In this document: positions 22,703 through 60,536 of the stretch, in pieces
Layout: every line of letters starts with the position of its first letter
How positions within the stretch are numbered: the first letter of the stretch is position 1
Assembly: GCF_000143415.4 (NCBI RefSeq)
Contig: NW_003314299.1
Coordinates: 1,490,559-1,554,558, forward strand
Direction: 5' to 3'
DNA: 64,000 nucleotides
DNA from: Selaginella moellendorffii
Lineage: Eukaryota > Plantae > Lycopodiophyta
Program-made: the position numbers and the translations under genes
The notes under the pieces: model-generated
Database searches by the model: none
The model's input: only the letters and a program-made list of their open reading frames with translations
Told to the model about the DNA's origin: nothing

Positions 22703-25098
<2,396 letters not shown>

Positions 25099-37656: not shown

Positions 37657-39686
37657 ATGCGATGTTGTGGGTTTCCTTGTTTTGATAGAGCCAGGGCGGT
37701 GGTAGCGGTTTTTCTCGTTTTCTATTTGGTTTTGGGTGTGACTCTTGTTTTGGGCGATGACGATCGCGGCCGCCAGCGATCCCTGACAATCCAGCGCGTT
37801 CTAGAAAAGATCAACAAGCCAGGCGTCGCCAGCATCCAGGTCGGTAAGCATTTCCTTTTCTCCATTTTCCTTTCCTCCATTTGGGAAGTTCTCGACTAAA
37901 GAATCTTCTTCCTTGATGTTCTTCCTTAAATTATTCGTGGGTGAAGAGTCCTGATGGAGATATTATCGACTGCGTTCCCATCGCCAACCAGCCGGCATTC
38001 GATCATCCATTGCTGCAAGGCTCCAAGCTACAGGTTCTCATATAAATTCTCACTTCCTTAGAAATCTCCTCTAACCTTCATGCCTGCTTGTTTGATCGGT
38101 GGTAAACTTGGTTCCCACGTTTGCGTGTTTTCCTTCGAGCATTCGTAAAATTACGTGTTTCTTCTTGTTCTACCATTTTGCTCGAGGCATTGGTGTCACT
38201 GATCGAGCGAATTTTTTGCTATCAACTTTACAGATCTCGCCATCAAATTCCTCGTTTCTTCTGGCCTCCAAGAGTGGCAGAAAGATCCAGCAGCGATGGC
38301 ACCAAGCTGGCCAGCGTTGTCCCAAAGGCAGCATTCCAGTCCGCCGGACGCTCGAGCTGGACGTGGAGAGAATCGCTCAGCAGCGCGAAAATCACTCGAT
38401 CGATTCCTTTGCTCGAAAATCCCAGGGCCCTCCACACGTAGACAGCCACAAAAGCTTGCAAGCTGCGGTACCTTCTAGCTCCAGGCAACACGAGGTAAGT
38501 TTTTCTTTTTATTCTTCTTCATTGTTCCTCCAAGTTGATGCATTTGGATTCTTCTCTTCGATCCTTGTTTTCGTGCTGCTGTTTTCCTGTTCACTTTTGT
38601 CAGGTTTTATCTTCATTGCGGTACAGTTCATGTTCGCAACTTTGTCTCTGTGCAGCTTTCTTACACCTTTTCTTCTTTTTTTTTACTTTTTTCTTTTTTT
38701 TTTTGAGATTTAGCACGCAATTGCGTACGCGGAGGGTGTGTTTTACGGAGCCGAGGCCGTGATCAATGTATGGGATCCGTCAGTAGAAGGTGCAGATGAG
38801 TTCAGCCTCTCGCAAGTCTGGATTCTCTCCGGAACTTTCAATGTTGATCTCAACAGTGTTGAAGCAGGCTGGCAGGTATTCAAAACTATTTCTCAAAAAA
38901 AAAACAAAAAGACAAGAAAAAAGCAGAAACAACTCACAAGAATTTCCAGGTGAACCCCGCTCTCTACGGCGACAGGAATCCCCGATTCTTCACATACTGG
39001 ACAGTAAGAAGTTTTCTTGTTTTGTGTTCATCTTTCTCAGGCTTTTCCAAATATCTCAGAGTGATTCTTACCGTGGCACTGGCTGCTACAACCTTCTGTG
39101 CGAAGGCTTCGTGCAAATCAACGACCAAGTCGTGCTGGGCGGAGCAGTCGCACCCGTTTCATCACTTAACGGCGTCCAATACGACATCCGCATCCTCATC
39201 TTCAAGGTACACACAAAAACCTCCAAACTTTTCTCTTCAATCTTCTCAACATATCTCAAGCTCTAGAGAAAGAGATCTTCCATCGTCCCAAGAAACGTCT
39301 CACAAACTTTTTATTCACTTTCGCAGGACTTCATAACCGGCAATTGGTGGCTTCGCTATGGAGACGAGCTCATTGGCTACTGGCCTCCGCAGCTCTTCAC
39401 TCACTTGGCCGGCTTTGCAAACGTGATTGAGTGGGGCGGCGAAGTGGTGAACACGAGACCAAACAACAGGCACACGGCAACACAGATGGGAAGCGGTCAC
39501 TACCCGCAGGCAGGCTACGCGGTGGCCAGTTATCTCAAAAACCTTCGTGTGGTGGATCTCACCAGCTTGCTGCGCGGCCCGGCTAGCATTTTTACGCTGT
39601 CCACCAAGCCCGACTGCTACAGTATCCGATCCTCGGGTGGAACTTTCTTTTACGGGGGGCCTGGATTGAGTTCTTCCTGTCAATAA
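37657..39686 (+). CDS. Neprosin-family (DUF239) glutamic peptidase 2 with activation peptide, multi-exon
   Basis: Hydrophobic N-terminus, [61 protein letters not shown] and QMGSGHYP. Confidence 0.92.
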
Positions 39687-40189: not shown

Positions 40190-40869
40190 AACAACAAACT
40201 CCTGCAATCGCTCGCCCTCGAGAGGCCACCGCTGTCCGTGTTGCCGCACTACCATGCCATCTCGACTTGTACGCAGCACGCTCGCATCTGGCTTATTACG
40301 GCCACAACTTGAAGTTTTGTGCCTCTCCAGAGTTATATATGTTCAAGAGTTTTGTTGGACTAGATGGCCGGCTTGGGACGCAGGATTCTAGCACGCAAGA
40401 GGAGGAGGAGGTATGTACATGTTTCTGTGTGCAAGCTTTTATTCCTTTCTTTCTTGCCAGGTTCTAGCAAATGGTTTCTGCAAGTAGCGCACTCCGTCCT
40501 TCATGGAGAAAGCTGTGAGGGCCTGCACTATGGTAGACATGTGATACTAGCATCCATTCTTTAACACACATTAAAATCTTTGCATGATTTCTTTTTGTGA
40601 TGTTCTCCAGCCAAATGGAAAAGGCATGGTTGATGAACATGCGGCCAGAGGACTATGATCTCGCAAAGCCACCGGACATAGCGATGTGGCGCGCTTACAG
40701 ACAGTACGTTGGGCATCCCGTGGTGGTTCCGAAAGAGCAGCCCAAGATTGAAGGCCGCGTCCTTTCCACTATCAACTATAAATACACCCGCTACCTTCAC
40801 ACCGAGGCCTTCTCAAGGAAGGAGGAGGAGATTCCAATACCAGGACTTCTATGCTCGTTTCGTCATTAA
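40190..40869 (+). pseudogene. 5'-truncated copy (exons 4-7) of the unrecognised 7-exon gene
   Basis: Homologous to 43594-44250, with deletions and an altered C-terminus. Confidence 0.8.
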
Positions 40870-41414
40870 TGTAATATCAGCTAGTTCAATGGAGTGATTT
40901 CTCTCTCTGAGGCGATGCTTAGATGGTTGCCTGCGTAGTGCACGCATGCTTAGAACGGCAGAGCTTCGATGCGATGTAACCTGTTTGAGCTAAGATGGAG
41001 CCATTCAACTTAAATGCGAGTGAGAAGAGATACTACGATGGGCCATTATGTGGACACGACCAAGTTCGAGGCTCTGGTATGTGAGAAAATCTTTCTCCTG
41101 GCTTTGATTTCCTTTTTCCCTCCTTTCTTCCAGGACGCAGTGCAGAGGTAGACACTTTGAACGCCTCACGTGAAAAGTTAAAGAAGTTTCCGAGCACGAC
41201 ATTTCCCCTCGAGATATCGGGCTCATAAAGAAGCAGATTGCTGACGCGCTGGAGCCTGGAGATATGGTGCTTGTTTTTTATTGTACGGCATTGTCATGCT
41301 TGGTAGTAGTATTCTATTGTCTTGGGTATGCCACTCACGCTAGCAGTATTCCTTTTGTCTTTCACTGAATGCATGCATATGCTTGTGCCTAGCTTATACA
41401 TCTCTGTGGATCTT

Positions 41415-42370
41415 GACGAGATGAGCCACATTTCTACTGAGTAGTAGGAACATTCAGGTTAGCAGTGATTTTCAAAAGCGTAGTTTTGCTCCTTGTCCTC
41501 CGAGAAACTGACCTCTGGTTGTCGCAGTAGAAAGCTGGTCGACATGTCCCAGCCACCCGGTCAAATAAATCTAGTGACATGGGCAAAGACCGCTGCTCAA
41601 CAGCAAGGAGGGACTGGAGATCCTCGGCTCTATACAATGTTCCATTTGACAACCTCGTCAGGGTGGCAGCGATCACCTCCAGCCGGACGTCTCTCACAGG
41701 CCTCTCATGCAGTCGTCCAGGCGTTGAAGCTAATATACAACGACTCGGACGCCAGCGACGGTATCGTGTCCGGCAATGGCAGCATGCCCAGGGAAAGCCA
41801 GCAGCAGGACGTAAAGTCGAGGAATCCTTTTGTCGGCGGTGGTGGAGCGTACGCAAGCGGTGGTGGTGGTGGTGGTGGTGACGACGAGAGAATTCGCACT
41901 GCGGCGAGACACGGCTGGGAGAGTGACTCGTTCAACAGCATTGACTACGACTCTAGGACGTTTGGTGGAGATTACCAAGGACGCTTCGGCTTGATCGATG
42001 TCGCCGCAGTGGGAGATGACGCGCATTGCTGCTGCTCCCCCAGCTTGACAGTGCTACCGAGTGAGAAACACGCAGTGAGTGTTGGTGCTACTGCGGTACA
42101 AGCGGGACGATGCTAACAGGAACGACCATAGTGACATTTGGCTGCTATAGTTTTTAGAGGGAGCGGGGCGGCGATGGTGGTTGGCGGAGATAGAAGGGAT
42201 AGATTGATCATTGTTTCACACAGGCTAGTCGTATTCTTGCTCGAGATGATGGTTTCGAGCTCGGCTTCTCATCGATTTGGATTTTCTTGCTGGGTGTTTG
42301 CTACTGGAGTATAGCAAGATCACGGGAGCAAAAGAAGGCGAGCTTGAGTTCCTGGCTCGGGAAACAAGCT
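41415..42370 (+). pseudogene. ALE2-like kinase 3' fragment and 3' UTR (copy a)
   Basis: [17 protein letters not shown] and [17 protein letters not shown]. It retains the ALE2 intron and has frameshifts and deletions. Confidence 0.88.
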
Positions 42371-42435
42371 GTCTATGCCAGAGTATCGAAAAAACGGCTT
42401 AATAGTAAACGTAGGGCACAGTATTGCGCGCAGCA

Positions 42436-44317
42436 ATGCTTTCCAGTTCTTTTCGTAGAAGTCTCTCGACGCTAGGCAGTTTTTCTCCGCTGCCCTCGCT
42501 TGGTCGTTTGTCTCCGCTTCCGGGCAGTTTATCTGCGGATCTGAGGCGTACGCTTCATCTATCGCCCGTGTATCGTACCGAGATTTTGAAACCAGGGGTA
42601 GGATTTAATGATCTTGTCAACGCAAGGGGTATTGGCTATGCTGGGGCCATGTCCAAGTTCGTCGCCAAAGCTGCACGGCCGCATGAGGAGGAGGCAGCGG
42701 CGATGGACGTGCACGAATGCGTGTGCATAGATGCCATGATCGCCAAATGGCATGCTGAAGATCCAGACGAGACGCTGTTCCTGGTGCTGGCACTCTGCTA
42801 CATCGCCCGCCTCTCCGATGCCGAGAGGAGCGCGTGCGCTGCAACGCTGGGCTGGGACGGCGCGCGAGCGCGGATGGACTGCATGGTTGATTTCGCTCGC
42901 CGGGTGCTCCTCTCGCAGACTCCAATCCTTGACTCGTTAGAAGCATCGAGGCAAGAGGAGGAAGTGACCGGTCACCTGGAGCGTTTGTGGAGCGCGTTTT
43001 GCAGGGAGAGGAACATGAAAGGTTTGTAACTTTTCTTGGTTTTCTAATGACGGTTTTAGATCTTTGTTTTGGAAGTGTGCTCCAAGGAGGTGGTGCGCAC
43101 TGATATCGATATGGATTTCTTTCCTGCAGAGCCTTACCGCAAGCCTTGCAATGGGGAATTTAGATGTAAGAAGTTTTTTATTTACCTGGTTTCTCTTGTC
43201 GACAACTCTTTCAGGGCGCTGCAAAGGGGACGTGGAGGAGAAGTGGGACATCAAATTCTCCCCTCTGAGTACCACGTTTGCGGGGGAAGTGCCAAAGCTA
43301 CTGGACTTGGTATCCAAAGTTGTGAACAGCGACTTCTTCTTTTTTCACCCGGTGGACAACATGGTGAGTAACTCAAATTCTTGAAATCTCTGATCTTTAT
43401 AAGTTCTGTCCACAGGGGTGGAATATGCGATCGGTTGTGCGTGACCAAGCTCGACGAGACCAAGTAAAATTGGTTTACTCGCTGCTTGCAGGACATCGAG
43501 TCCCGCCGCCTTGGCCGTTTGTCGAAATGGACGGCGTCATGTCTGCACCCCTGCGGGTCAAGGAACTGGTACTGCTGCTCGAAGGGATTCACAACAACAA
43601 ACTCCTGCGATCGCTCGCCCTCGAGAGGCCACCGCTGTCCGTGTTGCCACACTACCATGCCATCTCGACTTGCACGCAGCACGCTCGTATCTGGCTTGGG
43701 CGCTACGACCTCCGAATCTATTACGACCACAAGTTGACGTGTAAGTTTTGTGCCTCTCCAGAGCTATATATGTTCCAAGTGTTTTGTTGGACTAGATGGC
43801 CGGCTTGGAACACAGGATTCTAGCACGCAAGAGGAGGAGGAAGTATGTACATGTTTGTGTTTGCAAGCTTTTATTCTTTTCTTTCTTGCCAGGTTCTAGC
43901 AAATGGTTTCTACAAGGAGCGCACTCCGTCCTTTATGGAGAAAGCTGTGAGGATGTGCACTATGGGAGAGATGTGGTACTAGCATCCATTCTCTAACACA
44001 CATTAAAATATCGGCATGATTTGTTTTTGTGATACAGGGTGTCCTCCAACGAAAAGGAAGAGGCATTGCTGATGAACATGCGGCCAGAGGACTACGATCT
44101 CGCAAAGCCACCGGACACAGCGATGTGGCGTGCTTATAGACAATACGTTGGGCATCCCGTGGTGGTTCCAAAAGAGCAGCCCAAGATTGGAGCAGCCCAA
44201 GTCCTTTCGGATATCAACTATGAATACACCCGGTACCTTGGCTGGGAGACAAAGTCGAAACACAGCGAAGATGGTCTCTTTCCACTACCCGTACCAACTC
44301 TCCATGAAATCTTATAA
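42436..44317 (+). CDS. Uncharacterised 519-aa protein with a mitochondrial-presequence-like N-terminus (7 exons), intact copy 1
   Basis: Exons 42436-43021, 43076-43165, 43215-43363, 43416-43740, 43796-43842, 43893-43975 and 44038-44317. All introns are GT-AG and phase-compatible, giving 1560 nt with no internal stop. Confidence 0.72.
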
Positions 44318-45124
44318 ATTCTGTATGAAGAGTAAAGAATATATCTAGAATATCCCGGCATATTCTAAAGTATTTTTTAAGCCTGTTAAACTAATCAATT
44401 CCGGATAATATTGTTTATCTGTAATACAATTTTTTTGAGGCGCACTTGCTGCATCCTCATGCATATCCTGGAATTCGTTCAATACAAGCTTGGCGTGCGA
44501 GCAAGCGAGTTAGGGGAGGTTTCCAGGGTACAGGGCAACACTCGTGAGATTTTGTTCCTTCCAAAGTTCCTTACACATGACAGTTTGTGTGCTTAAATCA
44601 GTGGAAACCACGAGTCAGGAGGCGTTGTTTCATCAACCATGTTCAAATTCCCGTGCAAAATAGAAATCTGGTTTGTAGTTCTAAAATGGAGAAAAACTGA
44701 CATATAAATTTGTTATTTTTTCTTCTTTGCAAGGTGTTAAATTGACTATGGTCTCTTATGCTTCTGTATTGCCGACAACTGGTTGGTCATGGGATCCACG
44801 CTTTACTGGTTCTATGCCAGGTACCTGCATGTCCATAGAATTTGTAGCGTGTGAGAGCTAGCTAGGTTGCTTGTTTTTAGTTTTCCAGCGTTACAACAAC
44901 TCGGCAGTGCGGCATGCTCAACTTGACGACTTGCCCGTCCTTACTGTGCAGATTGCTGACGCGCTGGAGCCTGGAGAAATGGTGCTTGTTTTTAATTGTT
45001 CGGCATTGTCATGCTTGGTAGTAGCATTCTATTGTCTTGGGTATGCCACTCATGCAAGCAGTATTCCTTTTGTCTTTCACTGAATGCATTGCTTGTGCCT
45101 AGCATATACATCTCTGTGGATCTT

Positions 45125-46150
45125 GACGAGATGAGCCACATTTCTACTGAGTAATAGGAACATTCAGCTAAGCAGTGATTTTCAAAAGCGTAGTTTTGCT
45201 CCTTGTCCTCCGAGAAACTGGGCTCTGGTTGTCGCAGTTACATAGCTCCAGAGTACGCAATGACCGGACATCTTTTGGTGAAGAGCGATGTCTACCTCTA
45301 CGGGGTCGTGCTACTGGGGCTACTGTCGGGCAGAAAGCCGGTCGACATGTCCCAGCCACCCTGTCAAATAAATCTAGCAACATGGGCAAAGACCGCTGCT
45401 CAACAGCAAGGAGACTGGAGATCCTCGGCTCTAAATAATGTTCCATTCGACAACCTCGTCAGGATCACCTCCAGCCGGACGTCTCTCACAGGCCTCTCAT
45501 GCAGTTGTCCAGGCGTTGAAGCTAATGTACAACGACTCGGACGCCAGCGACGGTATCGTGTCCAGCAATGGCAGCATGCCCAGGGAAAGCCAGCAGCAGG
45601 ACGTAAAGTCGAGGAATCCTTTTGTCGGCGGTGGTGGTGATGGCGGTGGTGACGACGAGAGAATCCGCACTGTGGCGAGACACGGCTGGCAGAGTGGCTC
45701 GTTCAACAGCATTGACTACGACTCTAGGACGTTTGGTGGAGATCGGGCAGGGAGGCAGAACGCACTGTCAAGCTGGGGGAGCAGCAGCAATGCGCGTCAG
45801 CTCCCACTGCGGCGACATCGATCAAGCCGAAGCGTCCTTGGTACCGAGCGAGAAACGCGTAATGGGACAGTGAGTGAGTAGGCGCTACTGCAGTACAAGC
45901 GGGAAGATGCTAACAGGAACGACCATAGTGACAGTTTTTAGAGGGAGCGGGGCGGCGGGGTGGTGGTGGCGGAGATGGAAGGGATGGATTGATCATTGTT
46001 TCACGCAGGCTAGTCGGATTCTTGCTCGAGATGATGGTTTCGGCTTCTCATTGATTTGGATCTTCTTGCTGGGTGTTTGCTACTGGAGTATAGCGAGATC
46101 ACAGGAGCAAAAGAAGGCGACCTTGAGTTCCTGGCTCGGGAAACAAGCTG
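45125..46150 (+). pseudogene. ALE2-like kinase 3' fragment and 3' UTR (copy b, in the palindrome spacer)
   Basis: [41 protein letters not shown], followed by frameshifts. Confidence 0.88.
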
Positions 46151-46966
46151 TCCAGAGTGCAGGATGGTGATAGTTTGTAGCATATGATATCGTTGATGAC
46201 AGAGCCATTTGTGGCGAGAGCTCGGGCTACACCTCGAGGCGTTTTCCTGGTCTGGCACAGTAAGGACGGGCAAGTCGTCAAGTTGAGCATGCCGCGCTGC
46301 CGAGTTGTTGTAACGCTGGAAAACTAAATACCAGAAACAAGCAACCTAGCTAGCTCTCACACGCTACAAATTCTATGGACATGCAGGTACCTGGCATAGA
46401 ACCAATAAAGCATGGATCCCATGACCAACCAGTTGTCAGCAATATAGAAGCATAAGAGACCATAACAATTTAACACCTTGCAAAGAAGAAAAAATAACAA
46501 ATTTATATGTTAGCTTTTTCTCCACTTTAGAACTACAAACCAGATTTCTATTTTGCACAGGCATTTGAACATGGTTGATGAAACAACGCCTCCTAACTCG
46601 TGGTTTCCACTGATTTGAGCACACAAACTGTCATGTGTAAGGAACTTTGGAAGGAACAAAATTCTCACGAGGATCCAGATCGCCACACGTGCCCTGGGAA
46701 GCGAATCGAGAAGGAGCTAGCAGGCGCTGAGGGCGCCGCCTGGTCGTGTCGCCTTGTACCCTGGAAACCTCCCCTAACTCGCTTGCTCGCATGCCAAGCT
46801 TGTATCGAACGAATTCCAAGATATGCATGGAGATGCAGCAAGTGCGCAGGAAGCTCTGTGAATGGATGCCTCAAGAAAATTGTATTACATATTATCCGGA
46901 AAAAATACTTTAGAATATGCCGGGATATTCTAGATATATTCTTTACTCTTCATACAGCTTTCTAAT

Positions 46967-48856
46967 TTATAAGATTTCATGGAGAGTTGGTACGGGTAGT
47001 GGAAAAAGACCATCTTCGCTGTGTTTCGACTTTGTCTCCCAGCCAAGGTACCGGGTGTATTCATAGTTGATATCCGAAAGGACTTGGGCTGCTCCAATCT
47101 TGGGCTGCTCTTTTGGAACCACCACGGGATGCCCAACGTATTGTCTATAAGCACGCCACATCGCTGTGTCCGGTGGCTTTGCGAGATCGTAGTCCTCTGG
47201 CCGCATGTTCATCAGCAATGCCTCTTCCTTTTCGTTGGAGGACACCCTGTATCACAAAAACAAATCATGTCGATATTTTAATGTGTGTTAGAGAATGGAT
47301 GCTAGTACCACATCTCTCCCATAGTGCATATCCTCACAGCTTTCTCCATAAAGGACGGAGTGCGCTCCTTGCAGAAACCATTTGATAGAACCTGGCAAGA
47401 AAGAAAAGAATAAAAGCTTGCACACACAAACATGTACATACCTCCTCCTCCTCTTGCGTGCTAGAATCCTGCGTCCCAAGCCGGCCATCTAGTCCAACAA
47501 AACACTTGAACATATATAACTCTGGAGAGGCACAAAACTTACACGTCAATTTGTGGTCGTAATAGATTCGGAGGTCGTAGCGCCCAAGCCAGATGCGAGC
47601 GTGCTGCGTGCAAGTCGAGATGGCATGGTAGTGTGGCAACACGGACAGCGGTGGCCTCTCAAGGGCGAGCGATCGCAGGAGCTTGTTGTTGTGGATCCCT
47701 TCGAGCAGCAGTACCAGTTCCTTGACCCGCAGGGGTGCAGACATGACGCCGTCCATTTCGACAAACGGCCAAGGCGGCGGGACTCGATGTCCTGCAAGCA
47801 GCGAGTAAACCAATTTTACTTGGTCTCGTCGAGCTTGGTCACGCACAACCGATCGCATATTCCACCCCTGTGGACAGAACTTATAAAGATCAGAGATTTC
47901 AAGAATTTGAGTTACTCACCATGTTGTCCACCGGGTGAAAAAAGAAGAAGTCGCTGTTCACAACTTTGGATACCAAGTCCAGTAGCTTTGGCACTTCCCC
48001 CGCAAACGTGGTACTCAGAGGGGAGAATTTGATGTCCCACTTCTCCTCCACGTCCCCTTTGCAGCGCCCTGAAAGAGTTGTCGCAAGAGAAACCAGGTAA
48101 ATAAAAAGACTTCTTACATCTAAATTCCCCATTGCAAGGCTTGCGGTAAGGCTCTGCAGGAAAGAAATCCATATCGATATCGGTGCGCGCCACCTCCTTG
48201 GAGCACACTTCCAAAACAAAGATCCAAAACCGCCATCAGAAAACCAAGAAAAGTTACAAACCTTTCATGTTCCTCTCCCTGCAAAACGCGCTCCACAAAC
48301 GCTCCAGGTGCTCCGTCACCTCCTCGTCTTGCCTCGATGCTTCTAACGAGTCAAGGGTTGGAGTCCGCGAGAGCAGCACCCGGCGAGCGAAATCAACCAT
48401 GCAGTCCATCTGCGCTCGCGCGCCGTCCCAGCCCAGCGTTGCAGCGCACGCGCTCCTCTCGGCATCGGAGAGGCGGGCGATGTAGCAGAGTGCCAGCACC
48501 AGGAACAGCGTCTCGTCCGGATCTTCAGCATCCCATTTGGCGATCATGGCATCTATGCACACGCATTCGTGCACGTCCATCGCCGCTGCCTCCTCCTCAT
48601 GCGGCCGTGCAGCTTTGGCGACGAACTTGGACATGGCCCCAGCATAACCAATACCCCTTGCGTTGACAAGATCATTAAACCCTACCCCTGGTTTCAAAAT
48701 CTCGGTACGATACACGGGCGATAGATGAAGCGTACGCCTCAGATCCGCATATAAACTGCCCGGAAGCGGAGACAAACGAACCCGCGAGGGCAGCGGAGAA
48801 AAACTGCCAAGCGTCGAGAGACTTCTACGAAAAGAACTGGAAAACCTGGAAAGCAT
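46967..48856 (-). CDS. Uncharacterised ~522-aa protein, intact inverted copy 2 of the 7-exon gene
   Basis: Same exon structure as 42436-44317 and an identical last-exon protein. The N-terminus is MLSRFSSSFRRSLSTLG. The frame-shifting indels I saw lie in introns. Confidence 0.72.
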
Positions 48857-48899: not shown

Positions 48900-49875
48900 T
48901 TCGATACTCTGGCATATGTTACAAACTACCACCATCTTGCACTCTGGACAGCTTGTTTCCCGAGCCAGGAACTCAAGCTCGCCTTCTTTTGCTCCAGTAG
49001 CAAACACCCATCAAGAAGATCCAAATCGATGAGAAGCCGAGCTCGAAACCATCATCTCGAGCAAGAATACGACTCCATCCCTTCCATCTCCGCCACCACC
49101 ACCCCCGCCGCCCCGCTCCCTCTAAAAACTGTCACTATGGTCGTTCCTGTTAGCATCGTCCGTACCGCAGTAGCGCCGACTCACTCACTGTCCCATTACG
49201 CGTTTCTCACTCGGTACCAAGGAAGCTTCGGCTTCCCCGCCCGATCTCCACCAAACGTCCTAGAGTCGTAGTCAATGCTGTTGAACGAGCCACTCTCCCA
49301 GCCGTGTCTCGCCACAGTGCGGATTCTCTCGTCGTCACCACCGCCACCACCACCACCGCTTGCGTACGTTCCACCCGACTTTACGTCCTGCTGCTGGCTT
49401 TCCCTGGGCATGCTGCCATTGCCGGACACGATACCGTCGCTGGCGTCCGAGCCGTTGTACATTAGCTTCAACGCCTGGACGACTGCATGAGAGGCCTGTG
49501 AGAGACGTCCGGCTGGAGGTGATCGCTGCCACCCTGACGAGGTTGTCAAATGGAACATTGTATAGAGCCGAGGACTCCTTGCTGTTGAGCAGCGGTCTTT
49601 GCCCATGTCACTAGATTTATTTGACCGGGTGGCTGGGACATGTCGACCGACTTCTGCCCGACAGTAGCCCCAGTAGCACGACCCCGTAGCGGTAGACATC
49701 GCTCTTCACCAAAAGATGTCCGGTCATTGCGTACTCTGGAGCTATGTAACTGCGACAACCAGAGCCCAGTTTCCCGGAGGACAAGGAGCAAAACTACACT
49801 TTTGAAAATCACTGCTTACCTGAATGTTCCTATTATGTTCCTATTACTCAGTAGAAATGTGGTTCATCTCGTCAA
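48900..49875 (-). pseudogene. ALE2-like kinase 3' fragment and 3' UTR (copy c)
   Basis: Mirror image of copy a, with the same frameshifts. Confidence 0.87.
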
Positions 49876-50419
49876 GATCCAGAGAGATGTTTATGCCAGG
49901 CACAAGCATATGCATGCATTCAGTGAAAGACAAAAGGAATACTGCTCGCGTAAGTGGCATACCCAAGACAATAGAATGCTACTACCAAGCACGAACAATA
50001 AAAAACAAGCACCATATCTCCAGGCTCCAGCGCATCAGCAATCCGCTTCTTTGTGAGCCTGATATCTCGAGGGGAAATGTTGTGCTCGGAAACTTCTTTA
50101 TCTTTTCTCGTGAGGCGTTCAAAGTGTCTACCTCCGCACTGTCAAGCCATGCGTCCTGGAAGAAAGGAGGGAAAAGGGAAATCAAAGCCAGGAGAAAGAC
50201 TTTCTCACATACCAGAGCCTCGAACTTGGTCGTGTCCACATAATGGCCCATCGTAGTATTTCTTCTCTTTCGCATTTAAGTTGAATGGCTCCATCTTAGC
50301 TCAAACAGGTAACAAGGAAAGGATCGCTAACCATTTGTGCACTACGCAGGCAACGACGCCATCTAAGCATCGCCTCAGAGAGAGAAATCACTCCATTGAA
50401 CTAGTTGATATTACATTAA

Positions 50420-52100
50420 TGATGTCGCAGAAACGAGCTGGTACTGGAATCTCCTCTCTTTTGAGCTCCTTCCTTGCGAGCCTCGGTGTGGGGACCATCT
50501 TCGCTGTGTTTCAACTTTGTTGTACTGGGTGTATTTATAGTTGATAGTGGAAAGAACGCGGCCTTCAATCTTGGGCTGCTCTTTTGGAACCACCACAGGA
50601 AGCACGCCACATTGCTGTGTCTGGTGGCTTTGCGAGATCGTAGTCCTCTGGCCGCATGTTCATGAGCCATGCCTTTTCCATTTGGCTGGGGAACACCCTG
50701 CATCACAAAAAGAAAACCATGCCCAGATTTGGTAGAGAATGGATGCTCGTACCACATGTCTACCATAGTGCAGACCCTCACAGCTTTCTCCATGAAGGAC
50801 GGAGTGCGCTCCTTGCAGAAACCATTTGATAGAACCTGGCAAGAAAGAAAAGAATAAAAGCTTGCACACACAAACATGTACATACCTCCTCCTCCTCTTG
50901 CGTGCTATAATCCTGTGTCCCAAGCCGGCCATCTAGTCCAACAAAACACTTGGAACATATATAACTCTGGAGAGGCACAAAACTTACACGTCAACTTGTG
51001 GTCGTAATAGATTCGGAGGTCGTAGCGCCCAAGCCAGATGCGAGCGTTCTGCGTGCAAGCCGAGATAGATCCACAACAACAAGCTCCTGCGATCGCTCCT
51101 CCTCGAGAGACCACCGCTGTCCGTGTTGCCGCACTACCATGCCAGCAGTACCAGTTCCTTGACCCGCAGGGGTGCAGACATGACGCCGTCCATTTCGACA
51201 AACGGGCAAGGCGACCGTACTCGATGTCCTGCAAGCTGCGAGTAAACCAGTTTTACTTGGTCTCGTCGAGCTTGGTCACGCACAACCGAACCCTTGTGGA
51301 AAGAACTTATAAAGGTCAGGGATTTCAAGAATTTGAGTTCATGTTGTCCACGGGGAAGAAGTCGCAGTTTACAACCAGTCCAGTAGCTTTGGTACTTCCC
51401 CCATAAACGTGATATTCGAAGGGGAGAATTTGATGTTCCACTTCTCTTCCCCCTGAAAGTGTCGTCAACAAGAGAAACCAGGAAAAAAAAAGACTTCTTA
51501 CATCTGAATTCCCCATTGCAAGGAGGCTCGGCAGAGAAGAGATCCGTGTCGATAGTGGCACGCTCCACCCCCTTGGAGCTCACTTCCAGAACAATATCGT
51601 AAGGAAACGAAACTTTGGTCTGGATACAAACCTTTGATGTTCCTGTCCTTGCAAAACTTGCTCCACAGGCGCTCCAGATGCTCCTCATGCGTCTAGCGTG
51701 GCAAGGCTTGGAAGTCCAGTCGGTGAGAGAAGCACCCGGTGAGCGAAATCAATCATGCAGTCCATTTGCGATCGCGCGCCATCCCAACCCAGCGTCGCAG
51801 CACACCCGCTCCTCTTGGCATCGGAGAGGCGGGCGATGTAGCAGGGTGCCAGGACCAGGAACAGCGTCTCGTCCCATTTGGCGATCATGGCATCTATACA
51901 TGCGCATTCGTGCACGTCCATCGCCGCTGCCTCCTCCTCATGCGGCCGTGCAGCTCTGGCGACGAACTTGGACATGGCCTCAGCATAACCAATATCGCTA
52001 ATATCATCAAACCCTACCCCTGGTTTCAAGATCTCGGCGATAGATTAAGAAAACTACCTAGCGTCTACGAAAAGAACTGGAAAACCTGGAAAGCATTGCC
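50420..52100 (-). pseudogene. Degenerate near-full-length copy of the 7-exon gene
   Basis: MSKFVARAARPHEEEAAAMDVHECACIDAMIAKW and further homology, with deletions, frameshifts and an internal micro-inversion. Confidence 0.82.
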
Positions 52101-52287
52101 CTACGTCCCTTCTTTGGCAAACATATATGTTACAGAACGATCATGGCATCACTCTCGAGAGCTTTCCCGAGCCAGGAACTCAAGCTCGCCTTCTTTTGCT
52201 TCCTGTGACCTCGGTAGTAAACACTTGCAGCAAGAAACTCCAAGTCGATGAGAAGGCGAGCTCGAAACTACTATCACCACCATCTCC

Positions 52288-53159: not shown

Positions 53160-54597
53160 GATCGTCCACTTTTAATACACCCGGTTCTTGGCCAAGGAGA
53201 CAGAGTCGAAGCACAGCAGAGATCATCTCTTTCCACTGGCAATCCAGAAATTCTCAAGGGAGGACCTCATAAGAGAGGACATAGTTGATAGTGCAAAGGA
53301 CGAGGCCTCGAATCTTTCGCTGCTCTCTAAGAACCACCACGGGTTGCCCAAGGTACTTTTTATAAGCACGCCACATCGCCGTGTCCGGTGGCTTTGCGAG
53401 ATCGTAGTCCTCTGGCCGCATGTTCATCACCCATGCCTCTTCCTTTTCGTTGGGGTACACCATCACAACAACCAATGCCAGGATTCAAATCTGTGTGTTG
53501 AAGAATGGAAGCTATTACCACATTGCTTCAACAGCGCAGTCCCTCACAGCTTTCTCCATGAAGGACGGAGTGCGCTCCTTGCAGAAACCATTTGCTAGAA
53601 CCTGACAAGAAGAAAAGGATCAAAGTTTGTACACACGAACAAGTATATACCTCCTCCTCCTCCTGCGTGCTAGAGTCCTGTGTCCCAAGCCGGTCATCTG
53701 CTCCAAGAAAACTCTTGAGAAAGAGAACACATATAACTCTGGACAGGCACCACTTACACGTCAAATCGTGGTCGTAAGAGATTCGGAGGTCGTAGCGTCC
53801 AAGCCAGATGCGAGCGTGCTGCGTGCAAGCCGAGATGACATGGTAGTGCGGCAATACAGCCAGCGGCGGCCTTTCAAGAGCAAGCGATCGCAGGAGCTTG
53901 TTGTTGTGGATCCCTTCAAGCAGCAACATTAATTCCTTGATACGCAAAGGGGCAGAGTCGGCGGCGTCCACTGGAACATACGAGTCAGGCATGGATGTCC
54001 CGCAAGCTGCGAGTAAGCCAGTTTACTTGGTCTTCTCGAGCGTGGTCCCATCGACCAATCAACGAGATTTTAATGTTATCAGCTACAAGCTCTATCATTC
54101 TATCATTCGCATGCTGGGAACTCAAGGTTGGTTACTCACCAGATTGTCCACTGGGAGAGAACCAAAGAAGTCGCATATCACAACTTTGGATGCCAAGTCC
54201 AGTAGCTTTGGCACTTCCCCAATAAACGTGGTACTCAAAGGGGAGATTTTGATGCTCCACTGCTTCCTCTCTTCCTCTATGCAACGCCCTGCAGCTGTTG
54301 TCAACAAGAGAATAAAAAAGACTTCTTACATCTAAATTCCCCATTGGAAGGCTTCCGGTAAGGCTCCGCCGGCAAGAGATCCGTCCCAATAACGTTGTGC
54401 GCCACCTCTTTGGAACTCCGAGAAAACTTTGGCCTCAATACAAACCTTTGATGTTCCTGTCCTCGCAAAACTCGCTCCACAAACGCTCCAGGTGCTCCGT
54501 CACCTCCTTGTCTTGCTTCCATGCGTATAGCGGGGCAAGGCTTGTAAGTCCAGTCCGCGAGAGCAGCACCCGGCGAGCGAAATCAACCATGCAGTAA
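53160..54597 (-). pseudogene. More diverged, 5'-truncated copy of the 7-exon gene directly downstream of intact ALE2
   Basis: APLRIKELMLLLEGIHNNKLLRSLALERPP and MNMRPEDYDLAKPPDTAMWRAYKKY. Homology stops at 54597 in an AT-rich segment. Confidence 0.8.
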
Positions 54598-55014
54598 GGG
54601 TTAAAAAGGGTATTAAATTAATCTTAAAAAGGGTGATATATAACAAATGGAATTATTTAATCAAGTGATTAAATTCAAGGAGCCTAATACTCTAGTCAAA
54701 TGAAATATGTTACAAAAAAACGAGAGACAACTCACTACCATCATCTTGCCTGGCGTCCGCACAATCAAATCACTCTCGAGAGCTTGTTTCCCGAGCCAGG
54801 AACTCAAGCTCGCCATCTTCCCTTCTTTTGCTCCCTGTGATCTCGCTATACTTCAGTGGTAAACACTTTCAGCAAGAACATCCAAGCCGATGAGAAGCCG
54901 AGCTCGAAACCACCATCTCGAGCAAGAATCCGACTAGCCTGTGTAAATCAATGATCAATCTTCCATCCCTTCCATCTCCGCCACCACCACCACCACCACC
55001 GCTCCCTCTAAAAA

Positions 55015-57983
55015 CTATAGCAGCCAAATGTCACTATGGTCGTTCCTGTTAGCATCGCCCCGCTTGTACCGCAGTAGCGCCGACTCACTCACTGTCCCAT
55101 TGTCCGCGTTTCTCACTCGGTACCATGGACGCTTCGGTTTGATCGATGTCGCCGCAGTGGGAGCTGACGCGCATTGCTGCTGCTGGCTCGCGAAAGTCCC
55201 CACGATGAAACTCTCCGAGTTTGACAGTGCCTGCTGCCTCCCTGCCCGATCTCCACCAAACGTCCCGGAGTCGTAGTCTATGCTGATGAACGAGTCACTC
55301 TCTCGGCAGTGCCTCGCCGCACCGCTGATTCTCTCGTCGTCACCACCACCACCGTTTGCGTACGTTCCACCACCGCCGACGAAAGGATTCCTCGACTTCA
55401 CATCCTGCTGCTGGCTTTCCCTGTGCATGCTGCCATTGCCGGACATGATACCGTCGCTGGCGTCCGAGTCGTTGTACACCAGCTTCAATGCCTGGACAAC
55501 TTCTCCCATGAGAGGCCTGTGAGAGACGTCCGGCTGGACGCACATCGAGGCGATCGCTGCCACCTTGACCAGGTTGTCGAATGGAACGTTGTTCAGAGCC
55601 GGGTCGACGAGGATCTCCAGTCCCTCCTTGCTGTTGAGCAGCGGCCTTGCCCATGTCACTAGATTTTCTTGACCGGGTGGCTGGGACATGTCGACCGGCT
55701 TTCTGCCCGACAGTAGCTCGAGTAGCACAACCCCGTAGCTGTAGACATCGCTCTTCACCAAAAGATGTCCGGTCATTGCGTACTCTGGAGCGACGTAACT
55801 GCGCCAGTAAACCAGAGATCAGTTTCTCAGAGGATAAAAGAAAACTACGCTGTTGAAAACCAAAGCGTACCCGAATGTTCCCATCACTCGGGTAGAAATG
55901 TGGGTGCTCATCTCGTCAGAGGCCGCTTTTGCGAGCCCAAAATCCGACACTTTGGGAGTGAAATCCTCTTCTAGCAGTATGTTGCTGGCTTTGAAGTCTC
56001 TATGTATCACTCTGGGATTTGAATCCTCGTGAAGGTAAGCCAGACCGCGTGCTGCACCGAGAGCTATCTTCAAACGGGTTTCCCAATCCAAAGGCGAAGT
56101 TTCTTGATCAATGCCTGCAGTCATAGATAAATGCTAACAACGATGAAGTAGCTTGCACGTACCATGAAGGTGGGATTCAACACTTCCATTTGAAATGAGC
56201 TCGAAAACCAAGCATCGTGTGTGTTCTTCGATGCAAATGCCCAAAAGCTTCACCAGATTACGATGGTGAAGGCGGCTCAGCATTTCCACCTCCGCTGCAA
56301 ACTCACGGCCGCCCTGGTGATCATCTCTAGTCAAAACTTTGACAGCAACTCTTGTGTTGTCGTCCAGAATGCCATGATAAACTCGACCGAAACCTCCCTC
56401 TCCAATAATATTCTGCGTCTTGAACCCGTTGGTTGCCCGTTCTATCTCCAGTAGAGTAAATGTCTTTGCCGAGCCGGTATAAGGCGTGAAGCTCGACGCA
56501 TAAGAGATTGATGTCGAGCTGGCCATGCTGCTAGAGAGCATGGATCCTCCACCTGAAACAAACGAACTTTGTCAGTAAAAGATGCTTAGTAAACGAGCAG
56601 AATACCTGACTTCTTCGTCACAGACGAGCCAGGCAGCATGGGTTCAACCATCATAGGTTGCTTGGCATGTTTGCAGCGCCATGCAAACCACACCGCTACC
56701 AGGCATATAACGGCAAGCAGAGCAGTCAACACCACAACGGCTATGGTTCCAGTGCCGGGCCTTGACCTCCTCTTCTTTACATTGACACTGAGTGGTTGTT
56801 CGTAAGGACTTTTAGAGCTTGTAGGGCCTCCCGCATTGCTACCGGGCGAAGGAGGGGACGGAGGCAAGCCTGATCATGAGACCAACTTAACATAAAGCAT
56901 AAAGCAACATTTCAAAAAGAGATTTTACCTGGATATCGAACATAAAGGACGCTGTAGCTTCCAAACCGGTCCTCACTAATGCCAACCTCGTGATTCCAAA
57001 ACTTATGAGCTGTTCGCAAAGCAGTCGCATTGTCAAAGGCAGCTCCCAAAGGAACTAATTCTGCTTTAACTTCTGTTTCGTCCATGTTATTTTCCACTGT
57101 GTTCGCACCCAGAATTCGCACCTGGCTTTGCGAAAACGACGTCCCTGCCGCCAATTCTGAAGCCAACTCTGACACTTGCGGGAAAAACACATAAGGCGGC
57201 ACTCCAAGCTGAAGGCTCACCAGCATTGGAATAACACAGCCGCATGGTTCACCAGCAGTTGAAGTGAATGGATCTGTGCATCGTTCGTGACAGTCTGTGA
57301 CAAAAAGAAAACGTATTTTGATCGCCCTGAGGACATCTAAAAGAGCGTGTTACCCGTGGACGGTGCTGGCAACGAAGGAATAATACCAGGTGGAGGCATT
57401 GGAGAAACGGACGGGCCTGGGCCTAGAAGAAAGAACAAACAAAAAAAGAGTGCTGAAGCTTGAAAATGGAGGTGATCGTTGTTACCTGGAGTTGGCGCCT
57501 GGATGTGGACATGACGCCGATGGTGTGGCGATTGTGCTGGAACCACTCCCCCGTGACCTCGATGTGTTGGTGCGGGAGCGTGATCGTGACGATGATGGCG
57601 ATGGTGATGGTGCCCAGTGGTTGGAGCCGAGGCAATGCTTACTTGGTAGGATGGAGAGTGCTGCCCAGAAAGGAGAAACCGCCGGAAGTGAGTCTTCTCG
57701 GTTTGATCAGTAGCGCTGCGCAAACCCATATCACCAAAATGCTCTCAAGAGAAGATCGAGAAGTAGAAAACCAACTTACCGTCTTCCCAAGCCCTCGATT
57801 TCGCTCTCCCCAATTAGAACTCCTGGCACCAAACAACCCACCACATAAATTCCTACTCGTTTAAACAACGCACCAGAAGAAAAGAAAAACCAAAGAGAGA
57901 AAACACGAGAACTTACCTTGAGAAGCGGCAATGTAGAGAGCGCTCAAGCTCAGCACCACTAGCACGGCATTCCCACAACTCAT
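55015..57983 (-). CDS. ALE2: ALE2-like (Pro/His-rich ectodomain) receptor-like Ser/Thr kinase, multi-exon
   Basis: Signal peptide [23 protein letters not shown], a His/Pro-rich region, a Cys motif ([19 protein letters not shown]) and a TM helix ([22 protein letters not shown]). Kinase motifs [32 protein letters not shown] and [22 protein letters not shown]. Confidence 0.92.
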
Positions 57984-60536
57984 GGCTAGATGCGCCATTC
58001 ACTGCTCGCTCCCCATTCCTCCACTCTTGCTGCTCGCTTCCTCCTACATTATCCTCTCCGGCGGCTGTGGAGCGACCCTCCCCACAGGAGAGCCGCCTTC
58101 CCAGACCTAAAACCAGCTCCACCGCAAATCGCTGAGAAATCGCGCTGCCGCATGCCACTACTCCAAAATATTCCCCCTATTTCGTGCAATGCGAGCAAGA
58201 AATCCCCTCCCCGGGCGCATCAAAAGCTCGGCCTCGCCCCGGAGCGAGAGAATCTCTGCAATCCCTGCCTGCGCTCCATTCCGGAATCCTCCACGGCCGA
58301 AATCCAGCAATCCCTGCCTCTAGCAATGCGCGCCTGGGCGAGAATGCGGCATCGCGACCTGGAAATCTCGCCGCTCCGCGCCGCTGCTCCAAAGCACCAT
58401 CGCTGTCGCCTTCTTCACAATCAATGCCCCTCAACTCTGCGAGAGAAGGGAAGTGAGGAAAATAAAAATATACCTTTAAGACCACCTCGCTGGTAAAAGA
58501 GAGCGCCCGGCAATTTGGCCGGTCAAAAAAAGCAATGGGGGTAATGGCCAGTGGCCACGCCCGCTCACATGGGCCACACTGGACAAAGCGTATGCCCGTT
58601 GGGCAGAAACACTAAACCGCACTGACGGCGTCAAGTCCCCGTGTACGGACGAAGAGTACAATTGTTTAGCTGGAAATGACGGTGCAACGCTGACGGACGT
58701 AATAGCGGGTAAAGGCTCTGACCCCTGGGCAAAAGTGGGCATTTTTGTGCGCGTAATGCTTGGCCAGTGGCAAAGCAACAAGTGGCCACCAAGCTTAACA
58801 GTTGTTAGGTGTGATAGTAATTAAGTAAAATCCTTTTAGTTAGTGGGAATCTCTTTGAATGGCATTTTTTTTCTCTTTTATTTTGAGTTTTTGGAGCATG
58901 AAGTGGCCATGTTTCTTTTATAGCCTTGAAGAAGACGAAGAACTGATTGCTTGAAATTGGTCTTTGCATTGGAGGGGATGAACAAAGGTGTTTCCAAGGT
59001 CAAAAGTCTTGGTTGCCTTGAGAGAACTTAAACCCACATATTTTCTCTCTCTTTGCAATGTACCATCTTGGGGGTTGGAGCTAAGACTTGGATGAATGAT
59101 CAAACTACTTACTACTTGCATGGTCAGTTTCTATTGAAGACTGTGAAGGACGAAGCCAACAAACAAGAAAAAATCAAAATAAAAAAGGAGGAGGAAGAAA
59201 TAGAGTCTTTTTGGTTCTTCACTTTTCAATGTAAAGGGTTTTGGTTCCTTCTTTTTGACTGTGATGTTTTTGGCCTGTAGAGCCTGGAACAAAAGACAAC
59301 AATATCTATCCTACGCAAGTTATTCTCTTTTGGTTCGTTAGTGTATTGCTAGCTCGCTTAATTTAATTACATTCATAAAAATTTTCTAAACAAAGCCATC
59401 CGTGGTTATTGTGTTCAAGTAACTTCAAATATAGTTTTTTTAGAATAATTTTCTAATCAAAGCTATTAACTAAGTCTTGCATTGCTCACATACTGAAGCA
59501 ATTACTGTTTGTGACCTTATATATTTTCTTACAAGAGTTGAACATCCAGAATAAACTTTTGAAACAAATATATTTGAAGTCTTCATGCTGTTCAGAAATT
59601 AGTATTTACTAATACAGTATTTAATATAAATGTTTTTACAGCACTTCAAAAATTATATAACCTCCTGTGCATCTCTATATGGAAACATTTTTAGAACTCT
59701 AAGCTATTAAGAGTGTATATATATATGACCAAATTTAGTTGTATATATATAGATATATTTTACAGAAACTTGACTCGTTTTATAGGAGCTTTTTGATAAA
59801 TAAAAAAAAAAGACGTTTTTGTTAAAGTGTTTGACTTAAGCATCTTTAGCTGTAGATGTTAACCTATTTTCAGAACAAAGCTCATGAAAACATTCCCTTT
59901 GTTTTTCCTGATTTGTTTTGCCCAATTAATTGCTCATCAAATACCTTCAACCATGGCCTTTGGGAGTTCCTATCACATTATGAAATTGCAAGCATCATAT
60001 CTGTTTCAGAAGTGTGTATAGAATGTTTTATACAATACATGACATCTTATCAATGGACCATCACATAGTTGATTGCTCCTTTTTTATTCACGATGTTCAG
60101 CAAGGTGATAGATGCTCAGCAAATCAAGGAACATCAATTACAGGGATTGAATCTCAAGCCACCTTTACCTTTTTACTTTACAACACACAAGAAATTTACA
60201 GAGCAGTAGTAAATATTTGAGTGGAATGTTCGTGTTAGAGTACTGTGTGATCTATGTTCCAAGTCCACCTAGTCCTCCAAGTCATCAAATTCTTTCTTGG
60301 AATAGTAATTCTATAGTTTAGGAAGCTCAGTGTTTGAAACAATGTTATTTATGTGGTGGCCTCATTTCAGTGGTGACAAACTGTATCATCCAGATGGGCT
60401 TGTAATGCTAATTCTAACCTTCCCCTTTACAAAGTTTTCATTCAAGACTTCCAAACACGTTTTCAAACACAAGTGGTAATTTTAGGCTTCTTTGTTAATC
60501 GCTCGTTACTAGTTTCAATAACCATGGTGTTTATTG

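What the first reader, a model, noticed from the sequence alone, without database searches (positions are those of the whole stretch)
42436..48856. Hidden 7-exon orphan gene (~520 aa, mitochondrial-type presequence) present as two intact convergent copies plus three decayed ones
Seen: fragments scattered through the ORF track join through six phase-compatible GT-AG introns into one 1560-nt stop-free frame (42436-44317, +). An inverted copy (48856-46967, -) is also intact, and the frame-shifting indels I saw between the two lie in introns. The protein starts MLSSSFRRSLSTLGSFSPLPSLGRLSPL, which is Arg/Ser/Leu-rich with no acidic residue in the first ~33 aa, like a mitochondrial presequence. Blocks kept even in the most diverged copy include LLLEGIHNNKLLRSLALERPP, HYH..CTQHARIWLGRYDLR, KERTPSFMEKAVR and MNMRPEDYDLAKPPDTAMWRAY. 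I recognise no domain. Inference: a lineage-specific, locally amplifying, organelle-targeted family undergoing birth and death (2 intact, 3 broken copies in 14.5 kb). That pattern is seen in genes under conflict, such as cytonuclear or defence genes.
Basis: partly seen in the sequence, partly recalled or inferred. Interest (0 to 1): 0.82.

Follow-up and report, generated by a model that had tools for sequence, protein, structure and literature searches.

The report
Annotated spikemoss-only gene, duplicated locally

Summary
Copy 1 (42436-44317, +) and copy 2 (48856-46967, -) each join through six 49-62-nt GT-AG introns into one open frame of 520 and 523 codons. Three further copies (c3, c4, c5) are truncated or frame-broken.

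The gene is neither hidden nor a strict orphan. The window is Selaginella moellendorffii. GenBank already models copy 1 (SELMODRAFT_418592, chimeric) and copy 2 (SELMODRAFT_418593, N-truncated).

About ten diverged paralogous loci exist, and every relative I found is from S. moellendorffii. There is no Pfam family, no PDB sequence match and no convincing fold match.

Selection is purifying, not diversifying: dN/dS is 0.25 between the intact copies and 0.43 against a paralog on another scaffold.

The repeated unit also carries the 3' end of the neighbouring ALE2-like kinase gene, so this is segmental tandem plus inverted duplication. On the other haplotype the two arms are 100% identical.

The N-terminus looks like a transit peptide only in the close subfamily, and this was not tested with a predictor. 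The scan also holds another note on this same stretch (s1-420325, on the palindrome). Interest is low to moderate.

The parts
42436..44317 (+). Copy 1 (c1): intact 7-exon gene, 519 aa plus stop
   Evidence: Exons are 42436-43021, 43076-43165, 43215-43363, 43416-43740, 43796-43842, 43893-43975 and 44038-44317. Six GT-AG introns, 520 codons, one terminal stop. The public chimeric model P0021/SELMODRAFT_418592 uses the same junctions.
46967..48856 (-). Copy 2 (c2): intact 7-exon gene, 522 aa plus stop, convergent with c1
   Evidence: Same exons and GT-AG sites, no exon indel. The ATG at 48856 adds 9 nt. It is 97.9% identical to c1 in both exons and introns. Public model P0022/SELMODRAFT_418593 starts at an internal Met.
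40190..40850 (+). Copy 3 (c3): 3' fragment running from mid exon 4 to exon 7, decayed
   Evidence: tblastn and the alignment show 22- and 4-nt deletions in exon 4, two in-frame stops in exon 6 and a diverged C-terminus.
50475..52087 (-). Copy 4 (c4): decayed full-length copy
   Evidence: Deletions of 10, 13, 20, 17, 10, 8, 1, 7, 20 and 8 nt in exons. The intron-3 donor is deleted. An inverted segment lies inside exon 4 at 51015-51152.
53165..54595 (-). Copy 5 (c5): truncated, decayed copy directly downstream of the intact kinase gene
   Evidence: It lacks about 440 nt at the start of exon 1. Exon 4 has 1-, 1- and 7-nt deletions, and exon 7 has a +1 frameshift and a stop. It is part of the public chimeric model P0001/SELMODRAFT_418594.
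41233..42373 (+). Kinase 3' fragment upstream of c1, part of the duplicated unit
   Evidence: blastn matches the 3' end of the intact kinase gene at 54771-55918 and the other fragments. The ORF at 41493-42116 is a degenerate kinase C-terminus.
44948..46152 (+). Kinase 3' fragment in the spacer between c1 and c2
   Evidence: blastn gives 83-94% identity to 41233-42373 and 81% to 54771-55918.
49227..50288 (-). Kinase 3' fragment upstream of c2
   Evidence: blastn gives about 90% identity to 44948-45760 and 41001-41528.
54771..59608 (-). Intact ALE2-like receptor kinase gene, the source of the fragments
   Evidence: The kinase C-lobe matches Pfam in ORF 55015-55773. The allelic gene in L001 carries PF23180 ALE2_N plus Pkinase, and the stretch is 97.9% identical to L001 275-5290.
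44541..44949 (.). Inner inverted repeat of the palindrome; its partner is 46255-46671
   Evidence: blastn gives 94.7% identity in inverted orientation.

Best explanation
This is a genuine nuclear protein-coding gene of Selaginella moellendorffii. It belongs to a small family of about ten diverged loci that has so far been found only in this species. The family has no Pfam family and no recognisable fold.

How the array arose (inferred from the layout). The ancestral layout was an ALE2-like kinase gene followed, a few hundred bases downstream, by one copy of this gene. Segmental tandem duplication of a unit made of the kinase 3' end plus the gene, followed by an inverted duplication, produced five copies.

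What is shown. Two copies, c1 and c2, face each other and remain intact. They are under purifying selection. Arm-to-arm gene conversion probably homogenises them. The other three copies are decaying.

What is inferred about function. The protein is mostly alpha-helical. In this subfamily the first ~45 residues look like a cleavable organelle transit peptide. My best guess, at about 40%, is import into mitochondria or plastids, where the mature protein would act as a non-enzymatic binding or scaffold protein. The invariant 'RPP.S ... C..HAR.WL' core would be its functional site. Both the function and the location are inferred, not shown. The confidence of 0.75 is for the gene, family and duplication account, not for the function.
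For: - Gene structure: six GT-AG introns and a 520-codon open frame in both copies. Three public models use the same junctions, including RefSeq XP_024536178.1 for the allele.
- Exon sizes and intron spacing are the same in a paralog on another scaffold, L002.
- Purifying selection between c1 and c2: Sd 18.5, Nd 15.5, omega 0.25, binomial p 2e-4. For exons 2-7 alone omega is 0.12.
- Purifying selection between c1 and the L002 paralog: dS 0.30, omega 0.43, p 2e-7.
- All three c1/c2 indels lie in introns.
- Family: exon-4 phmmer against 1.84 billion representatives gave 11 hits. The 10 I looked up are all S. moellendorffii. The word and profile searches also returned only S. moellendorffii.
- No Pfam, PDB sequence or fold match.
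- The duplicated unit includes kinase fragments.
- The other haplotype also has two convergent copies, 100% identical over 1981 nt.
- The N-terminus carries a net charge of +4 to +6, at most one acidic residue in the first 45 aa, and is Ser/Leu/Pro-rich in c1, c2, P0017, P0024, P0002 and P0020. Residues 1-55 are disordered in the AF2 model.
Against: - I had no transcript evidence. The expression-atlas supplements held here do not mention these gene ids.
- Exons and introns of c1 and c2 are equally diverged at 97.9%, so the case for constraint rests on the synonymous/nonsynonymous split and on where the indels fall.
- If the arms exchange sequence by conversion, including with the pseudogene copies, pairwise dN/dS is only approximate.
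- Omega of 0.43 against the paralog means fairly weak constraint.
- Distant family members lack a transit-peptide-like N-terminus, and no targeting predictor was run.
- 'Selaginella-only' depends on how many other lycophyte proteomes the protein libraries hold, which I could not check.
- The AF2 model is of middling confidence (pLDDT 61.5, pTM 0.67, 14 sequences), so the lack of a fold match is weak evidence of a new fold.
Confidence: 0.75

Rival explanations
1. The copies are young duplicates with no function of their own. Their open frames survive only because the duplication, or conversion between the arms, is recent. The whole array, including c1 and c2, is on its way to decay.
For: - c1 and c2 differ by only 2.1%, the same in introns and exons.
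- With 34 coding differences, escaping a stop by chance is not unlikely.
- Three of five copies are already broken.
- Exon 1 alone has omega 0.43, not significantly below 1.
Against: - The excess of synonymous changes is significant: p 2e-4 overall, and omega 0.12 in exons 2-7.
- All indels lie in introns.
- Four intact gene copies exist across the two haplotypes.
- The paralog on another scaffold shows omega 0.43 with the same gene structure, so the family as such is constrained.
Confidence: 0.12
2. The ~11-kb palindrome matters as an RNA source rather than as two protein genes. Read-through of the convergent arms, with their kinase fragments, would give a hairpin or double-stranded RNA that feeds small RNAs against the ALE2-like kinase or against this family. 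This is the reading of the scan's other note, s1-420325.
For: - The inverted arms are 97-98% complementary over about 1.9 kb, with flanking kinase fragments in inverted orientation.
- The convergent genes lie only about 2.6 kb apart.
Against: - Nothing here shows small RNAs.
- Purifying selection at the protein level is not needed for a hairpin source.
- The two readings do not exclude each other.
Confidence: 0.1
3. The family is carried or amplified by a transposable element, either as a captured host gene or as a transposon accessory protein. That would explain the many copies.
For: - Several loci per genome and local clusters on other scaffolds.
- An LTR retroelement lies elsewhere in the window, as ORFs at 10-18.5 kb.
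Against: - No transposase, RT or integrase domain in any member.
- No viral fold match.
- Members are diverged (24-78% identity) rather than near-identical.
- Exon and intron layout matches the paralog examined.
- The local repeat unit is defined by a fragment of the neighbouring host kinase gene, not by terminal repeats.
- The L002 paralog is single-copy within 22 kb.
Confidence: 0.04
4. One reading: a family in genetic conflict, cytonuclear or defence-related, evolving under diversifying selection with rapid turnover.
For: - Lineage-restricted family, local birth and death, and fast overall evolution (members down to 24% identity).
- Transit-peptide-like N-terminus.
- Most amino-acid changes between c1 and c2 sit in exon 1.
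Against: - Every pairwise omega is below 1: 0.25, 0.32, 0.33 and 0.43 for the intact pairs.
- The values of 0.5-0.7 involve pseudogene copies and fit relaxation, not positive selection.
- No site-level test was possible.
Confidence: 0.08

Closest known systems
RefSeq XP_024536178.1, 'uncharacterized protein LOC112348244' (S. moellendorffii, scaffold GL377593.1); P0017
   Same: 519 aa with identical exon junctions. It differs from c1 by 17.5 nonsynonymous and 16.5 synonymous changes over 515 codons (dN 0.015, dS 0.047). It lies beside the allelic ALE2-like kinase and PPR genes, and that scaffold also has two convergent copies.
   Different: It sits on the other haplotype scaffold. There the two arms are 100% identical and 6.9 kb apart, against 97.9% identity and about 2.6 kb here, and the decayed copies are arranged differently.
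GenBank models on this scaffold: EFJ20185.1 (SELMODRAFT_418592), EFJ20294.1 (SELMODRAFT_418593), EFJ20295.1 (SELMODRAFT_418594)
   Same: They are built from c1, c2 and c5+c4 of this window and use the same internal splice junctions.
   Different: All three are imperfect. 418592 (1139 aa) fuses c1 to the kinase fragments on both sides. 418593 (448 aa) starts at an internal Met and so loses the transit-peptide-like N-terminus. 418594 (954 aa) strings two pseudogene copies and a kinase fragment together.
Paralogs LOC9631083 / LOC9633316 (XP_024528135.1 and others, 532-536 aa, scaffold GL377574.1); P0024, P0025
   Same: 78% identity over the full length. The exon sizes and intron spacing match, and the N-terminus is the same Ser/Leu/Pro-rich basic type. 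Against c1, dS is 0.30 and omega 0.43.
   Different: They lie on another scaffold, without a kinase fragment or a palindrome in the 22 kb examined. They have a longer C-terminus. Two RefSeq isoforms differ by 4 aa at the exon 2/3 junction.
Palindromic gene pairs kept alike by arm-to-arm gene conversion (for example ampliconic palindromes of sex chromosomes; from general knowledge)
   Same: Two intact genes sit in inverted arms. Arm identity is 97.9% on one haplotype and 100% on the other. Differences are patchy, with none between 43130 and 43415 and most in exon 1.
   Different: Conversion is inferred, not shown. The 100% identity could also be an assembly effect. This locus is autosomal-type and small (about 2-kb arms).

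Membership tests
Unnamed S. moellendorffii family (LOC112348244 / SELMODRAFT_418593-like) | Significant full-length sequence similarity to the other members | tested here: met
   Exon 4 alone gives E 1e-55 to 1e-4 against 11 proteins. Allele P0017 aligns along its whole length, at 78-24% identity, to 13 members.
Unnamed S. moellendorffii family (LOC112348244 / SELMODRAFT_418593-like) | Invariant core 'LLxxL..RPP.S...C..HAR.WL...Y....LTY' (P0017 residues 329-384) plus R409, P411 and R419 | tested here: met
   These are the invariant columns of A2. The same residues are encoded by exon 4 to exon 6 of c1 and c2.
Unnamed S. moellendorffii family (LOC112348244 / SELMODRAFT_418593-like) | Shared exon-intron layout | tested here: met
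   The exon pieces of c1 map to L002 with the same lengths and with 50-70-nt gaps between them. Only one paralog was checked.
Proteins with a cleavable mitochondrial presequence | N-terminus basic, free of acidic residues, hydroxylated, and able to form an amphipathic helix | tested here: inconclusive
   In the first 45 aa there are 5-7 Arg/Lys, at most one Asp/Glu and 13-14 Ser/Thr. The maximum helical hydrophobic moment is 0.6-0.75. The high Ser and Pro content fits a plastid transit peptide equally well.
Proteins with a cleavable mitochondrial presequence | Predicted or shown import and cleavage | not testable with these tools
   TargetP or MitoFates and localisation experiments are not available here.
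Transposon-encoded or transposon-captured genes | A transposase, RT or integrase domain, or terminal repeats bounding the unit | tested here: not met
   No such Pfam hit in 14 members. The unit boundaries are homologous to the host kinase gene. No systematic search for terminal repeats was made at the other loci.
Leucine-rich repeat proteins (ribonuclease-inhibitor type) | Tandem LRR units recognised by Pfam LRR models, with an alpha/beta horseshoe fold | tested here: not met
   The only lead was language-model feature scores of 0.80-0.89 with a low count of shared features. There is no Pfam LRR hit, and the AF2 model is nearly all-helical without repeats.

The most novel reading that the evidence does not exclude
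The family is a lycophyte, or even Selaginella-only, invention with a previously unseen helical fold. One subfamily would have gained an organelle transit peptide and now serve the unusual organelle biology of Selaginella. The c1/c2 pair would be kept intact by conversion within a palindrome.
Probability: 0.08. Interest if true: 0.6.

Novelty: already known. Interest (0 to 1): 0.25.

Why it matters
For the scan, this shows that a reader working from raw sequence can reconstruct a correct seven-exon plant gene. Its models for c1 and c2 are better than the GenBank models on this scaffold.

Biologically the locus is a tidy example of three things:
- a gene duplicated together with a piece of its neighbour;
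- an inverted pair that stays intact while its tandem sisters decay;
- two haplotypes that differ in arm identity (97.9% against 100%).

The family itself is one of many uncharacterized lineage-restricted plant families. It would become interesting only if organelle targeting and a function were shown.

Tried and rejected
- Pfam on each exon of c1 gave nothing at E up to 1.
- Pfam on 8 and then 14 full-length members gave only scattered sub-threshold hits (SR-25, Rtf2, NaeI) in one or two members each. I rejected these.
- PDB sequence search with exon 1 and with the family profile gave nothing at E up to 10.
- The word search with exon 1 gave nothing, but its length window excludes full-length kin, so that blank means little.
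- The AF2 model of the allele (pLDDT 61.5, pTM 0.67) was searched four ways, with no usable match:
  - Foldseek against PDB and against viral models: no match at E 0.001 or below.
  - ESM Atlas by shape: TM 0.24 or lower.
  - VIA-align across 48,161 chains: best Z 4.1, on 60-70-residue winged-helix-like pieces. That is below the level that means anything for helical proteins.
- A second AF2 model, of the N-terminally shorter member P0005, reached only pLDDT 46.8, so I did not search with it.
- ESM Atlas feature search gave LRR-type clusters at 0.80-0.89, which is noise level.
- Literature search by locus tags found no paper. The supplements of the S. moellendorffii expression-atlas preprint have no hit for these ids.
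- An alternative intron 3 (donor at 43367, acceptor at 43491) was considered and dropped. Homologs align to the whole of exon 4 from 43416, and the public models use the 52-nt intron.
- A longer intron 1 (43022-43129) was my first model and was also dropped. Homologs read through 43076-43129.
- Exact look-ups of three neighbouring ORFs and of several RefSeq paralogs found nothing on record.
Exons were searched one by one by reference. For full-length work I used the public allele P0017 and the public c2 model P0022.


Full report
**What is there**

The stretch from 40.1 to 55.9 kb of the window is an array of five copies of one unit. The unit is a fragment of the 3' end of a receptor-kinase gene followed by a multi-exon gene (blastn of 41.0-46.5 kb against the window; repeats).

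On the minus strand, from right to left, the order is:
- the intact kinase gene (about 59.6-54.8 kb);
- copy c5 (54595-53165);
- c4 (about 52087-50475);
- a kinase fragment (50288-49227);
- c2 (48856-46967).

Then comes a spacer that holds another kinase fragment (44948-46152) and an inner inverted repeat (44541-44949 / 46255-46671). After it the mirror image follows on the plus strand, read from the spacer outward: c1 (42436-44317), its kinase fragment (41233-42373), and c3 (40190-40850).

**Gene model**

I rebuilt the c1 model from the frames, from conservation between copies and from homologs.

The exons are 42436-43021, 43076-43165, 43215-43363, 43416-43740, 43796-43842, 43893-43975 and 44038-44317. 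The six introns are 54, 49, 52, 55, 50 and 62 nt, all GT-AG.

c2 has the same exons and splice sites, no indel in any exon, and a 9-nt in-frame extension at the start.

For the frame check I carried the one or two leftover bases from exon to exon in memory. No joined sequence was printed, saved or searched.

**The three decayed copies**

- c3 is only the 3' third of the gene and has two stops.
- c4 has about ten frame-breaking deletions, has lost the intron-3 donor, and carries a small inversion inside exon 4.
- c5 lacks the first ~148 codons, has 1-, 1- and 7-nt deletions in exon 4, and has a frameshift and a stop in exon 7.

**It is already annotated**

A phmmer search with exon 4 (108 aa) against 1.84 billion representative proteins found 11 proteins. 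The ten I looked up are all from Selaginella moellendorffii.

Three GenBank models come from this very scaffold:
- EFJ20185.1 / SELMODRAFT_418592: c1 fused to kinase fragments, 1139 aa.
- EFJ20294.1 / SELMODRAFT_418593: c2 from an internal Met, 448 aa.
- EFJ20295.1 / SELMODRAFT_418594: c5 plus c4 plus a kinase fragment, 954 aa.

On the other haplotype scaffold (GL377593.1, locus L001) the gene is RefSeq XP_024536178.1, 'uncharacterized protein LOC112348244'. It is 519 aa and uses exactly the junctions derived here.

So the gene is not hidden from public annotation.

**It is not an orphan in the strict sense**

The genome holds about ten diverged loci of the same family. These are P0002 to P0011, P0016, P0019 and P0020, most of them seen twice because the assembly holds both haplotypes. 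Identity to the allele runs from 78% down to 24%.

The invariant residues cluster in a core encoded by exons 4 to 6: L329, L338, L342, P347, P348, S350, H364, A365, R366, W368, L369, Y377, L382, Y384, R409, P411 and R419 in P0017 numbering.

A paralog on scaffold GL377574.1 (L002) has the same exon sizes and intron spacing.

Every relative found by the single-sequence search, the word search and the profile search is from S. moellendorffii. How many other lycophyte proteomes those libraries hold is unknown to me, so 'restricted to Selaginella' is only provisional.

**What the protein is**

No member matches any Pfam family. Neither exon 1 nor the family profile matches any PDB sequence.

The AF2 model of the allele, built on 14 sequences, has pLDDT 61.5 and pTM 0.67. 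It is almost entirely helical. Residues 1-55, 200-248 and most of 428-519 are disordered or poorly predicted.

It has no match in PDB or BFVD by Foldseek, none in the ESM Atlas by shape, and a best Z of 4.1 over 48,161 chains by VIA-align. With a model of this quality that is weak evidence for a new fold. A second model of a shorter member was too poor to use.

**Selection**

Between c1 and c2 there are 18.5 synonymous and 15.5 nonsynonymous differences (dS 0.053, dN 0.013, omega 0.25). The excess of synonymous changes has binomial p 2e-4. Omega is 0.12 for exons 2-7 and 0.43 for exon 1.

The three indels between the copies all lie in introns (p 0.007).

Against the L002 paralog, dS is 0.30 and omega 0.43 (p 2e-7). 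Pairs that involve c3, c4 or c5 give 0.4-0.7, as expected for relaxed copies.

This is purifying selection of moderate strength. It gives no sign of the diversifying selection that a 'conflict' reading would predict, although site-level tests were not possible.

One caveat applies. Exons and introns of c1 and c2 are equally diverged at 97.9%, and the arms may exchange sequence. On the other haplotype the two convergent copies are 100% identical over 1981 nt, and here the differences are patchy. Arm-to-arm gene conversion is the simplest reading, but an assembly effect is not excluded.

**Targeting**

The first 45 residues of c1, c2, the allele and the close paralogs (P0024, P0002, P0020) carry 5-7 basic residues, at most one acidic residue and 3-14 Ser/Thr, with many Leu and Pro. 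They are disordered in the model.

That fits an organelle transit peptide, but the composition does not separate mitochondrial from plastid. The distant members (P0006, P0009, P0010, P0011) begin with acidic N-termini, so targeting, if real, is a property of one subfamily.

I put import into an organelle at about 40%.

**How the array arose (inferred)**

A paralog on another scaffold has the full N-terminus, so the full-length gene is ancestral and c5 suffered a deletion.

Each unit begins inside the kinase's 3' part. The start codon of c1 lies 63 nt after the end of the kinase-derived sequence and 320 nt after its former stop codon. The duplications therefore probably carried the gene's promoter along with the kinase fragment.

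**Verdict**

It is a real gene, amplified locally with birth and death, with no known domain and apparently lineage-restricted.
- It is wrong or unsupported on 'hidden', 'orphan' and 'conflict'.
- The function remains unknown, and the gene and its family are already in public databases as uncharacterized proteins.
- Interest is low to moderate.
- The scan's other note on this same stretch (s1-420325) concerns the palindrome and kinase fragments, which I confirm as a structure. Its siRNA idea was not tested.

Noticed in passing
L001:10005-11985 and L001:18925-20905: On the other haplotype scaffold the two convergent copies are 100% identical over 1981 nt and 6.9 kb apart. In this window they are 97.9% identical and about 2.6 kb apart. 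The order and orientation of the decayed copies also differ between the haplotypes. This is either gene conversion plus structural variation, or an assembly effect.
   Followed up: partly
window 51015-51152: Copy c4 carries a small inverted segment inside exon 4. This stretch of the exon matches on the opposite strand from the rest of the copy.
   Followed up: partly
window 54771-59608 (-): An intact receptor-like kinase gene. Its allele carries Pfam ALE2_N plus a kinase domain. At least three fragments of its 3' end are scattered through the array at 41233-42373, 44948-46152 and 49227-50288, with shorter bits at 52150-52524.
   Followed up: partly
window 60537-63233 (-): An 898-aa single-exon ORF with pentatricopeptide-repeat character. 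The allelic gene in L001 has PPR Pfam hits.
   Followed up: partly
window 38099-38713 (+): An ORF with a borderline match to the neprosin activation peptide (PF14365, 38.5 bits against a cut-off of 39.2), followed by low-complexity sequence. It may be a fragment of a neprosin-like gene.
   Followed up: no
window about 10180-18450: ORFs that read like gag, reverse transcriptase and integrase of an LTR retrotransposon, with an AT-rich stretch at 12-14 kb (GC 0.26). I judged this from the translations only.
   Followed up: no
window 22703-25098 (-): Two large ORFs whose translations look like a beta-amylase (glycosyl hydrolase family 14). This is from reading the sequence and was not tested.
   Followed up: no
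L002 and proteins P0024/P0025: Two RefSeq isoforms of the paralog differ by four residues (RCKG) at the exon 2/3 junction, which looks like an alternative acceptor 12 nt apart. Two loci (LOC9631083, LOC9633316) are credited with identical proteins.
   Followed up: no
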